Source of the DNA: Macrostomum lignano
Lineage: Eukaryota
Reading direction: 5' to 3'
Length of the DNA stretch: 64,000 bases
Assembly: GCA_002269645.1 (NCBI GenBank)
Contig: NIVC01002276.1
Coordinates: forward strand, 1 to 64,000
Shown here one piece after another: positions 45,944 through 46,323 of this stretch. The position numbers and the translations under genes are program-made. Under the pieces are notes generated by a model. The model searched no databases. It was not told the origin of the DNA and was given only the letters and a program-made list of their open reading frames with translations. Numbering within the stretch: the stretch's first letter is position 1; every line of letters starts with the position of its first letter.

Positions 45944-46323
45944 GCTCCCCCTACACCGACCTGCTCTCCGAGGAGATTCTGCTGATGCAGCAGTCGCAGC
46001 AGCTGGTCAGGCTTAAAATGGCCTACCTCCATCCGGCCAAGGCTGACCTCAGCTGCGCCAGGTCTGGTCATCGCAGCCAAGGAATGCTCGAGCTGTCCAT
46101 CGAGCACATTGGCGGCGCTTTCCTAGCCCTGCTGACAGGATTAGCGGCTGCCGGCGCTGCTGGCGGGATTGAACTGCTGCTCATAAACTCGGCTGCGGAT
46201 GGAGGCCGGCGAAGGCGGCTGCTAAGAGGCATGGATCGCGGATTTCAGCCAAGGAGGAGGGTCAGCGGTGCCGAATCGCTTCGGGTGAGATTGAATGGGA
46301 GGAAAGATGATACAGTTGGTTGA
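45944..46323 (+). CDS. Paralogous alternative terminal exon of the iGluR (end of S2, M4, distinct C-tail)
   Basis: Acceptor ataattgtag|gctccccctac has the same phase and start (G-SPY) as exon 13. Reads GSPYTDLLSEEILLMQQ...SC...LSIEHIGGAFLALLTG...GIELL, alignable with [17 protein letters not shown]...PC...[16 protein letters not shown]...GIEFC. Open to a stop at 46323. Confidence 0.8.

What the first reader, a model, noticed from the sequence alone, without database searches (positions are those of the whole stretch)
45944..46323. Duplicated S2-M4-tail exon: a flip/flop-like switch that would swap the whole back end of a glutamate receptor
Seen: about 0.9 kb after the receptor's stop codon is a second, strongly diverged copy of exon 13. 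It has an acceptor in the same phase (both start G|GC-TCx = G-S-P-Y) and an open 126-codon frame. It keeps the S2 disulfide Cys and the pre-M4/M4 signature (IGGAF...G...GIE), but replaces KWW with MAYL, has an Ala/Gly-rich M4 and a new Arg-rich tail ending DDTVG. No other receptor exons lie between 45018 and 45944, so the only upstream partner in the window is exon 12 (donor 42716). Established: vertebrate AMPA receptors use duplicated mutually exclusive flip/flop exons that start in this part of S2 but stop before M4. Inference: this is an independent exon duplication exchanging the S2 end, M4 and the cytoplasmic tail together, which could change desensitisation, assembly and trafficking.
Basis: partly seen in the sequence, partly recalled or inferred. 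Interest (0 to 1): 0.82.

Follow-up and report, generated by a model that had tools for sequence, protein, structure and literature searches.

The report
Diverged second S2-M4 exon of a glutamate receptor
A flatworm (Macrostomum-like) glutamate-receptor gene has an old second copy of the exon for the end of its ligand-binding domain and its last membrane helix, lying just past the normal stop codon; the copy still looks protein-coding and is probably an alternative final exon, but no transcript data could be checked.

Summary
Window 45944-46323 (+) is a second, roughly 35%-identical copy of the receptor's S2-M4 exon (43764-44029). It has an AG acceptor in the same phase, an open 126-codon frame, and no other copy in the window.

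The homologous 82 codons behave like live coding sequence:
- Copy 2 keeps 13 of 16 residues that are invariant in the family, against 14 of 62 variable ones (p = 2.6e-5).
- It beats every neutral-decay simulation.
- It has an in-frame codon-usage signal as strong as the best real exons here.
- It keeps the M4 face that contacts the channel core.

Copy 2 has also evolved fast. KWW has become AYL, M4 is Ala/Gly-rich, and the ancestral donor is lost (GT to GC). The 43-codon Arg-rich tail looks like non-coding read-through.

The geometry is an alternative last exon lying beyond exon 14's stop and its likely poly(A) signal. It is not an internal flip/flop cassette.

No RNA data and no close relative exist in the searchable collections, so use of the exon is unproven.

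My verdict is a real, ancient exon duplicate. I put about 0.5 on a functional alternative 3'-terminal exon that swaps the end of S2, M4 and the tail, and about 0.33 on a recently orphaned relic. Interest is moderate.

The parts
42491..42716 (+). Exon 12 (first part of S2, including the partner Cys of the S2 disulfide). It ends in phase 1 (G|GTGAGA) and is the only frame-compatible upstream partner of both copies.
   Evidence: Homologues align at 42419-42718.
43764..44029 (+). Copy 1, the canonical S2-M4 exon (GSPYVD...KWW...C...IGGAF...[12 protein letters not shown]). Acceptor tttacag|GC, donor TCA|GTAAGC (phase 0).
   Evidence: Flatworm homologues match with E 1e-9 to 1e-21.
44662..45018 (+). 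Exon 14, the cytoplasmic tail and stop of the canonical isoform ([19 protein letters not shown]...STQL*).
   Evidence: Weak matches to tail exons in L003-L005.
45326..45331 (+). ATTAAA, the only poly(A)-type hexamer between the canonical stop and copy 2. It is the probable proximal cleavage signal that an exon 12 to copy 2 transcript must bypass.
45483..45922 (.). Tandem-repeat array (25-bp unit CTGTAGCCCCCAGTGACAGCAAAGG; 87-bp higher order). It ends 22 nt before the copy-2 acceptor. Its last unit supplies a branch-point-like TGAC at 45915-45918.
   Evidence: The unit is found nowhere else in the window.
45944..46191 (+). Copy 2, homologous part: end of S2 (helices J/K), the disulfide Cys, the S2-M4 linker and M4 (GSPYTDLLSEEILLMQQSQQLVRLKMAYLHPAKADLSC...IEHIGGAFLALLTGLAAAGAAGGIELLLINS). 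Coding-like and constrained.
46192..46323 (+). Copy 2 tail: 43 codons plus TGA (AADGGRRRRLLRGMDRGFQPRRRVSGAESLRVRLNGRKDDTVG*). This is read-through past the lost donor (TCG|GCTGCG where copy 1 has TCA|GTAAGC). Its codon usage looks non-coding.
46285..46290 (+). In-frame donor-like GTGAGA (CGG|GTGAGA, phase 0), the same hexamer as the exon 12 donor. No downstream partner exon was found, so it may be coincidental.
46411..46416 (+). First ATTAAA after the copy-2 stop (88 nt downstream; it recurs within a 42-bp repeat). Candidate distal poly(A) signal.

Best explanation
Copy 2 arose by an old duplication, within this gene or its lineage, of the S2-M4 exon (probably of the exon 13-14 block) of a kainate/AMPA-type glutamate receptor in a Macrostomum-like flatworm.

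Proposed mechanism (inferred):
- The copy is retained as an alternative 3'-terminal coding exon.
- When transcription runs past the weak proximal poly(A) site, the exon 12 donor (42716) can splice to the acceptor at 45944 instead of 43764. Exons 13 and 14 are then removed as intron.
- The product has the same amino-terminal domain, S1, M1-M3 and first half of S2. It differs in LBD helices J/K (AYL instead of KWW), the S2-M4 linker and M4. The new M4 is Ala/Gly-rich but keeps the core-facing positions I-A-L-G-A-A-E. The tail is short and Arg-rich.
- Helices J/K form the LBD dimer interface, and M4 is needed for tetramer assembly. The expected consequence is therefore altered desensitisation and/or assembly.

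What is shown: homology, phase, an open frame, protein-level constraint, and a coding codon signal in the S2-M4 part.

What is inferred: splicing to exon 12, the poly(A) choice, and any functional difference.
For: - Unique significant homology to copy 1, with the same acceptor phase and the same GSPY start.
- Copy 2 retains 13 of 16 residues invariant in copy 1 plus 5 homologues, against 14 of 62 variable columns (Fisher p = 2.6e-5). The three changes are conservative: L>M, W>Y, W>L.
- Neutral-decay simulations never reach the observed BLOSUM sum (125 against a maximum of 110 in 5000 runs). They reach the observed amino-acid identity in at most 0.16% of runs.
- Identity by codon position runs 2nd > 1st > 3rd, and dS is saturated at 1.59.
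- The codon-usage frame score is +0.48 bits/codon in frame, against -0.38 and -0.51 out of frame. Only 0.1% of non-coding windows reach this score, and it sits in the top 2% of real-exon windows.
- GC3 is 0.73, greater than GC1, which is greater than GC2, as in real exons. The GC island is sharply bounded.
- Exon 12 plus copy 2 aligns colinearly to GluK5/GluK2 through M4.
- The M4 Kyte-Doolittle (KD) hydropathy is 1.84, which is TM-competent.
- Five of the seven VVLGAVE-face positions are identical to copy 1, including the G and E whose mutation disrupts AMPAR tetramerisation (PMC10558804).
- Four residues are shared with copy 1 but absent from all outgroups, which points to a lineage-specific duplication.
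- Only one weak ATTAAA lies between the canonical stop and copy 2.
- Tandem-duplicated exon substitutions are enriched in ion channels and in terminal TM segments (PMC9741552).
Against: - There is no transcript or junction evidence. The source species is absent from every searchable collection: exon 12 has no self-hit, and copy 2 has no hit in 5.8 billion clusters or 1.84 billion representatives.
- The exon lies beyond the terminal exon, its stop and a poly(A) hexamer.
- The homologous donor is lost, and the tail scores as non-coding. Only 0.9% of real-exon windows score that low.
- The KWW motif, invariant in all homologues, is gone.
- Copy 2 has 13-18 unique changes against 4-6 for copy 1 in three of five outgroup comparisons (chi2 4.8-8); the other two are not significant. 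This is consistent with relaxed constraint.
- The acceptor is TAG with a poor pyrimidine tract, whereas the other acceptors of this gene that were read are CAG.
- The distant relatives L001-L004 carry a single S2-M4 exon.
- No complementary 'selector' sequences were found.
Confidence: 0.5

Rival explanations
1. Copy 2 is a recently orphaned relic (pseudo-exon). It would be the last coding exon of a former tandem paralogue, or of a partial 3' duplication. It was under selection for most of its history but is no longer spliced into any mRNA.
For: - The donor is lost and the tail is non-coding-like.
- No exon 14' or any other receptor exon lies downstream.
- KWW is lost, M4 hydrophobicity is weakened, and copy 2 evolves faster.
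- It sits past the gene's stop and poly(A) hexamer.
- A young LINE and a GIY-YIG element lie 1.2 kb downstream, which shows recent rearrangement of the neighbourhood.
Against: - Since saturation of dS there has been no stop, no frameshift and no decay of codon periodicity in 82 codons.
- Family-invariant residues are kept selectively.
- Loss of function would have to be very recent relative to the age of the duplicate.
- A deletion would have to remove about 12 or more upstream exons yet spare the acceptor 926 bp from the parent's stop.
Confidence: 0.33
2. Copy 2 is expressed on its own, through SL trans-splicing at 45944 or a local promoter. Translation from the first in-frame ATG (Met at the 14th codon of copy 2, LLMQQ...) would give a protein of about 112 aa consisting mainly of the S2-M4 linker, M4 and an Arg-rich tail.
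For: - The coding signal is confined to this exon.
- There is an acceptor with no nearby partner other than exon 12, and the exon lies downstream of a poly(A) hexamer, as in a polycistron.
- The RRRR after M4 fits the positive-inside rule.
- From background knowledge, trans-splicing is common in Macrostomum.
Against: - Residues upstream of that Met (GSPY.D..SE.IL) are among the best conserved, which argues that they are translated.
- The conserved disulfide Cys needs its partner in exon 12.
- No promoter or spliced-leader evidence is available.
Confidence: 0.05
3. The acceptor at 45944 is used from exon 13 (phase 0) rather than exon 12. That gives a receptor with a 13-residue alternative tail (…HIKHS-APPTPTCSPRRFC*), and the S2-M4 frame of copy 2 is not translated.
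For: The exon 13 donor is strong (TCA|GTAAGC). The +0 frame of copy 2 stops after 13 codons, so a short-tail isoform is formally possible.
Against: This does not explain the frame-specific codon signal, the retention of invariant residues, or the open 126-codon frame in the other phase.
Confidence: 0.05
4. An assembly mis-join inside the 25-bp tandem array (45483-45922) has placed the terminal exon of a different paralogue next to this gene.
For: The repeat array ends 22 nt before the acceptor. The genome is extremely repeat-rich. No flank homology exists between the two copies.
Against: - The array is only about 440 bp, and its unit is unique in the window.
- Copy 2 shares derived residues with copy 1.
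- No read data are available to test the idea.
Confidence: 0.05

Closest known systems
Flip/flop mutually exclusive exons of vertebrate AMPA receptors (GRIA1-4)
   Same: Both are tandem-duplicated homologous exons in an iGluR gene that encode the end of S2 (helices J/K, the LBD dimer interface) and the S2-M4 linker. Flip/flop is 115 nt (38 aa) and affects desensitisation, assembly and trafficking (PMC8257547). Copy 2 starts 4 residues upstream of the flip/flop start when aligned to GluA2.
   Different: - Flip and flop are equal-length internal cassettes that lie adjacent to each other, each with acceptor and donor. They differ at 8-10 of 38 residues and stop before M4.
- Here the copies are about 35% identical.
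- The second copy includes M4 and supplies its own stop.
- It lies after the gene's terminal exon and has no homologous donor. It is an alternative last exon, not a cassette.
- It originated independently, in a kainate-like flatworm gene.
C-terminal splice variants of kainate and NMDA receptors (GluK1-2a/b/c, GluK2a/b, GluN1 C2/C2')
   Same: Alternative 3' exons change the cytoplasmic tail and trafficking. Arg-rich ER-retention-type motifs occur in some tails (background knowledge; most described iGluR splice events affect the CTD, PMC8257547).
   Different: Those variants diverge after M4 and their alternative exons are not homologous to each other. Here the alternative block begins inside the LBD and replaces M4 itself.
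[quoted passage not shown] CaV, NaV and ABCC family exons encoding TM segments)
   Same: These are homologous exon swaps, enriched in ion channels and in terminal regions containing single TM helices. They are mostly ancient and have arisen convergently (PMC9741552).
   Different: No iGluR example that swaps M4 turned up in the literature searches I ran. Expression of both alternatives is documented for the known cases but not here.
Tandem exon-12 pair in a related invertebrate kainate-type receptor (locus L005, ENA ERZ25067879)
   Same: This is an independent duplication of an S2-encoding exon in the same receptor family. Both copies are intact, with the same phase and their own splice sites.
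   Different: It affects the preceding exon (S2 ligand-contact part). It is a classical adjacent internal pair with both acceptor and donor, and M4 is not involved. The organism is unknown.

Membership tests
AMPA/kainate-type iGluR S2-M4 segment | Colinear alignment with S2 helices J/K, linker and M4 of solved receptors | tested here: met
   Exon 12 plus copy 2 aligns to GluK5 residues 684-844 (E = 7e-35) and to GluK2 residues 696-834, through M4.
AMPA/kainate-type iGluR S2-M4 segment | Conserved S2 disulfide cysteine | tested here: met
   The Cys column is invariant in all 7 aligned sequences, including copy 2.
AMPA/kainate-type iGluR S2-M4 segment | KWW motif at the end of helix K | tested here: not met
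   Copy 2 has AYL (W>Y, W>L). WW is invariant in copy 1 and in 5 homologues, and is present in GluA2.
AMPA/kainate-type iGluR S2-M4 segment | Hydrophobic M4 with the core-facing VVLGAVE-type face (conserved G and E) | tested here: met
   The Kyte-Doolittle (KD) 19-residue maximum is 1.84. The face positions read I-A-L-G-A-A-E, against copy 1 I-A-L-G-S-C-E and GluA2 V-V-L-G-A-V-E. Offsets were checked on GluA2 7ldd_B, and the motif comes from PMC10558804.
AMPA/kainate-type iGluR S2-M4 segment | Pfam Lig_chan (PF00060) above the gathering score | tested here: inconclusive
   The fragment is too short. Copy 1 reaches only 12.9 bits (cut-off 30.8) and copy 2 gives no hit.
Mutually exclusive tandem exon pair (flip/flop type) | Two homologous exons in tandem on the same strand with the same acceptor phase | tested here: met
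   Both start G|GC-TCN (GSPY) after AG. BLASTP gives E = 2e-8.
Mutually exclusive tandem exon pair (flip/flop type) | Both exons internal and interchangeable, each with acceptor and donor in the same phases and of similar length | tested here: not met
   The homologous donor of copy 2 is TCG|GCTGCG (lost). Copy 2 lies after terminal exon 14 and carries its own stop. No downstream partner exon exists.
Mutually exclusive tandem exon pair (flip/flop type) | Transcripts that contain one exon or the other | not testable with these tools
   There is no RNA-seq tool, and the species is absent from the protein and contig collections.
Mutually exclusive tandem exon pair (flip/flop type) | Both copies conserved in related species | tested here: inconclusive
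   Only distant relatives were available (30-45% identity in this exon). L001-L004 have one S2-M4 exon within the fetched flank.
Decayed pseudo-exon or gene fragment | Stops, frameshifts or a neutral substitution pattern | tested here: not met
   There are no stops or frameshifts in 126 codons. The neutral model is rejected. Invariant residues are retained selectively.
Decayed pseudo-exon or gene fragment | Loss of the frame-specific codon-usage signal | tested here: inconclusive
   Not met for 45946-46191 (+0.48 bits/codon). Met for the tail 46192-46320 (-0.17).

The most novel reading that the evidence does not exclude
Copy 2 could be translated as a free-standing mini-subunit of linker, M4 and tail. 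It would come from a trans-spliced or separately initiated RNA and would supply or compete for the M4 position of glutamate-receptor tetramers in trans. That would be a genetically encoded regulator of iGluR assembly derived from the receptor's own last exon. A less extreme version of this idea is my best explanation: the first iGluR isoform pair that exchanges the M4 helix by splicing.
Probability: 0.05. Interest if true: 0.85.

Novelty: new variant of a known kind. Interest (0 to 1): 0.48.

Why it matters
In iGluRs, M4 is the eukaryote-specific peripheral helix needed for tetramerisation, and even subtle substitutions on its core-facing side reduce assembly (PMC10558804). Helices J/K set the stability of the LBD dimer interface and hence desensitisation (PMC8257547).

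A natural isoform pair that swaps both at once would be a ready-made experiment on how these elements co-determine gating and assembly. In this pair the core-facing positions are kept and the other M4 positions are replaced by Ala/Gly. It would also be an independent, convergent counterpart of vertebrate flip/flop in a lophotrochozoan.

If copy 2 is only a relic, it is a routine by-product of a duplication-rich genome.

Tried and rejected
- Chance similarity is rejected. The homology is unique and significant, the frame is open only in the homologous phase, and the codon signal is frame-specific.
- A long-dead pseudo-exon is rejected by the neutral simulations and the selective retention of invariant residues.
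- An ancient separate paralogue lineage is unlikely. An exhaustive HMMER search of 1.84 billion representatives found no iGluR closer to copy 2. The only hit, P0033, is a tandem-repeat protein matched in 6 short stretches and is spurious. Copy 2 also shares derived residues with copy 1.
- Retro-copy or LINE transduction is unlikely. The acceptor and its phase are preserved, copy 2 is old (dS saturated), and the adjacent LINE has an intact ORF.
- The search for a copy-2 orthologue found nothing: word-index protein search, representative search, metagenome contig scan, and six related loci.
- The search for an exon 14' or any further receptor exon downstream found nothing.
- Flank homology between the two copies is not significant beyond about 20 nt upstream of the acceptor.
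- No competing RNA-structure or selector sequences were found between intron 12 and the region upstream of copy 2. No inverted repeats link them.
- Rfam found no RNA family in 42000-48500.
- Pfam on the fragments was uninformative.
- Literature searches found no report of M4-swapping iGluR isoforms or of Macrostomum iGluR splicing.
- I did not run structure prediction. With an alignment of canonical homologues it would thread either copy and so would not discriminate between them.

Full report
**1. What is there**

The window carries a multi-exon kainate/AMPA-type glutamate receptor gene on the + strand, with exons recognisable from about 31358 to 45018. Its 3' end is as follows.
- Exon 12 is 42491-42716 (S2, ends ...GYGIGMPA-G|GTGAGA, phase 1).
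- Exon 13, called copy 1 here, is 43764-44029. It runs GSPYVD...LRQKWW...KPC...[34 protein letters not shown] and has the donor TCA|GTAAGC.
- Exon 14 is 44662-45018 (the tail, stop TGA at 45016-18).

At 45944, directly after ...aattgtag, a second reading frame starts in the same phase (G|GC TCC CCC TAC = GSPY). It runs 126 codons to TGA at 46321-23.

**2. It is not chance**
- BLASTP of copy 1 against copy 2 gives E = 2e-8 at 35% identity.
- tblastn of every receptor exon against the window finds a second match only for exon 13, at 45946-46116.
- The frame is open only in the homologous phase. The other five frames have 3-8 stops, and P(open) from composition is about 0.01.
- The region is a GC island (0.60) with sharp AT-rich or repeat borders.

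**3. Origin of the window**

The closest named relatives of the receptor exons are all flatworms: Hymenolepis, Macrostomum lignano, Paragonimus and Protopolystoma. The intact LINE ORF 2 kb downstream has named hits only in M. lignano, up to 92% identity over 31% of its length. The window therefore comes from Macrostomum or a close relative.

The species' own sequences are not in the searchable collections. Exon 12 has no self-hit (best 66%). Copy 2 has no hit in the 5.8-billion-cluster database, none in the metagenome contigs, and only a spurious repeat protein among 1.84 billion representatives. The absence of copy 2 from those collections therefore says nothing about whether it is expressed.

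**4. Is copy 2 (or was it until recently) under selection as protein?**

Four independent tests say yes for the 82 homologous codons (45946-46191).

(a) Sixteen alignment columns are invariant in copy 1 plus five homologues that are 30-45% identical to it. Copy 2 keeps 13 of them, and the three changes are conservative (L>M, W>Y, W>L). At the 62 variable columns it matches copy 1 only 14 times (Fisher p = 2.6e-5). Neutral drift on the copy-2 branch cannot know which columns matter.

(b) I simulated neutral decay of copy 1 to the observed nucleotide identity. No run in 5000 reached the observed BLOSUM62 sum (125 against a maximum of 110). The observed amino-acid identity was reached in at most 0.16% of runs.

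(c) Identity by codon position runs 2nd (0.54) > 1st (0.49) > 3rd (0.41), and dS is saturated (1.59; dN 0.77). The codon signal is therefore not inherited from the ancestor.

(d) I trained a codon-usage frame score on 14 real exons of this window. It gives +0.48 bits/codon in frame, against -0.38 and -0.51 out of frame. Leave-one-out values for the 14 training exons span 0.14 to 0.50. Only 0.1% of non-coding 82-codon windows reach 0.48.

**5. Structural plausibility**
- Exon 12 plus copy 2 aligns colinearly to solved GluK5, GluK2 and GluA2 chains through M4.
- The disulfide Cys, the IGG.F start of M4, the mid-M4 Gly and the terminal Glu are kept.
- I checked the GluA2 sequence against PDB 7ldd_B and used the 'VVLGAVE' face that contacts the channel core. 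G823, V830 and E834 of GluA2 are named in PMC10558804. At that face, copy 1 reads I-A-L-G-S-C-E and copy 2 reads I-A-L-G-A-A-E.
- That is 5 of 7 identical, against 5 of 16 at the other M4 positions, where bulky residues have become Ala/Gly. The numbers are small, so this is only suggestive.
- The best 19-residue hydropathy of M4 is 1.84, against 2.25 for copy 1. That is lower but still in the transmembrane range.

**6. Signs of relaxation or remodelling**
- KWW, invariant in all homologues and in GluA2, is AYL in copy 2.
- Copy 2 has 13-18 unique changes against 4-6 for copy 1 in three of the five outgroup comparisons (chi2 4.8-8). The other two comparisons are not significant.
- The homologous donor is destroyed: copy 1 has ACTCA|GTAAGC and copy 2 has ACTCG|GCTGCG. 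Translation therefore reads on for 43 codons.
- That tail has GC3 below GC1 and GC2 and a codon score of -0.17. Only 0.9% of real-exon 43-codon windows score that low, whereas 57% of non-coding windows do. Its openness is unremarkable (P about 0.2).
- An in-frame CGG|GTGAGA sits at 46285, but no coding-like partner exon or exon-14-like sequence follows.
- The DNA flanks of the two copies share no significant similarity, as expected for an old duplication.

**7. Geometry**

Copy 2 lies 926 bp after the canonical stop. It is downstream of the only poly(A)-type hexamer in that interval (ATTAAA at 45326) and 22 nt after a 440-bp tandem array. The last repeat unit offers a branch-like TGAC 26 nt upstream of the AG. 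Its acceptor is TAG with a weak pyrimidine tract. Copy 1's acceptor is similarly weak, and the other acceptors of the gene are CAG.

Copy 2 can therefore work only as an alternative last exon coupled to bypass of the proximal poly(A) site. It cannot work as an internal mutually exclusive cassette. Only exon 12 gives a sensible in-frame product. Exon 13 joined to 45944 would read APPTPTCSPRRFC*.

**8. Relatives**

I fetched six loci around homologous genes from cestode, trematode and unidentified invertebrate contigs. L001-L004 have a single S2-M4 exon within the available flank. They are too distant to be decisive. L005 unexpectedly has two intact exon-12-like exons in tandem, with the same phase and their own splice sites. 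Exon duplication within the S2 coding region has therefore happened independently in this receptor family.

**9. Interpretation**

The duplicate is real and old. Its S2-M4 part has been kept as protein-coding sequence until now or until very recently. It has no other partner exon, and its best-conserved residues include the first ones after the acceptor. The most economical reading is an alternative 3'-terminal exon spliced to exon 12 (confidence 0.5).

The main rival is a relic that lost its use recently (0.33). That fits the lost donor, the non-coding-like tail, the loss of KWW and the fast rate. It requires that the loss of use be very recent relative to the age of the duplicate.

Minor rivals, at about 0.05 each, are a free-standing M4 mini-protein, use of the acceptor from exon 13, and an assembly mis-join at the repeat.

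**10. Comparison with known cases**

Functionally the nearest analogue is AMPA-receptor flip/flop. Those are 115-nt exons encoding 38 aa at the end of S2 and the S2-TM4 linker (PMC8257547). Tandem-duplicated exon substitutions more generally are enriched in ion channels and terminal TM segments (PMC9741552).

Copy 2 fails the structural definition of a flip/flop-type cassette. It has no homologous donor, it is not internal, and it is only 35% identical to its partner. It also extends through M4, which no iGluR splice event that I found in the literature does.

I file it as a new variant of a known kind, conditional on expression. Interest is moderate (0.48). It would be interesting to iGluR structure-function specialists if the isoform exists, but it is unverified and sits in a duplication-rich genome.

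Noticed in passing
L005:8927-9140 and L005:10082-10309: A related kainate-type receptor gene on an unidentified invertebrate contig (ENA ERZ25067879) has two intact exon-12-like exons in tandem. They share the same phase, and each has its own AG acceptor and GT donor (…GELLDHVGYGIGTQIG vs …[16 protein letters not shown]). This looks like a classical mutually exclusive pair in the ligand-contacting part of S2. In that gene the S2-M4 region is split into two exons.
   Followed up: partly
window 47564-48322 (-) and 48456-51572 (+): A 252-aa ORF has a weak GIY-YIG match (sub-threshold, 16.8 bits). Next to it is an intact 1038-aa APE+RT LINE ORF at 64% GC. All named homologues of the LINE ORF are Macrostomum lignano proteins (up to 92% identity over 31%), which places the window in or near that genus. 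These are young insertions 1.2 kb downstream of copy 2.
   Followed up: partly
window 37001-37249 and 59417-59731 (- strand ORFs): Fragments resemble the C-terminal end of the same LINE protein (…[36 protein letters not shown]…). They sit antisense inside a receptor intron and inside the carboxylesterase-family gene. This was seen only by eye in the ORF list.
   Followed up: no
P0006 (UniRef A0A1I8JQ94, Macrostomum lignano): This predicted M. lignano receptor joins the exon-12 equivalent directly to an exon-14-like tail (…GYGIGLPSG-TQPIMTELWQELKLALRCAV…). It omits the S2-M4 exon and therefore M4. It is either a mis-model or a hint of variable 3' splicing in this gene family.
   Followed up: no
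window, nearly every intron and intergenic stretch (e.g. 42729-43305, 44162-44418, 45483-45922, 46399-46952): Short-unit tandem arrays (16-45 bp units, 0.2-1 kb) fill almost every intron. Several unit families recur at distant places: the 45-bp unit at 21801, 23314 and 63353, and the 16-bp unit at 57858 and 62140 in opposite orientation. Both copies of the S2-M4 exon are bracketed by such arrays.
   Followed up: no
window 57279-60846 (+): The downstream gene belongs to the carboxylesterase family (Pfam COesterase, E = 2e-39 and 4e-25). A later exon contains a hydrophobic stretch followed by RRRPRR, so the architecture is neuroligin-like. It is not related to copy 2.
   Followed up: partly
window 18438-19139 (+): A 233-aa single-exon ORF has a C-terminus (…LQEQYDAFLRFNHDQIYR…) that resembles akirin. 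That resemblance is from memory only, and Pfam gave no hit.
   Followed up: partly
window 44725-44745 and 46243-46263: Both alternative tails contain an R-R-x-S motif (KRRAS in exon 14, RRRVS in the copy-2 tail) a short distance after M4. This may be coincidence in Arg-rich sequence. No significant similarity between the tails was detected.
   Followed up: no
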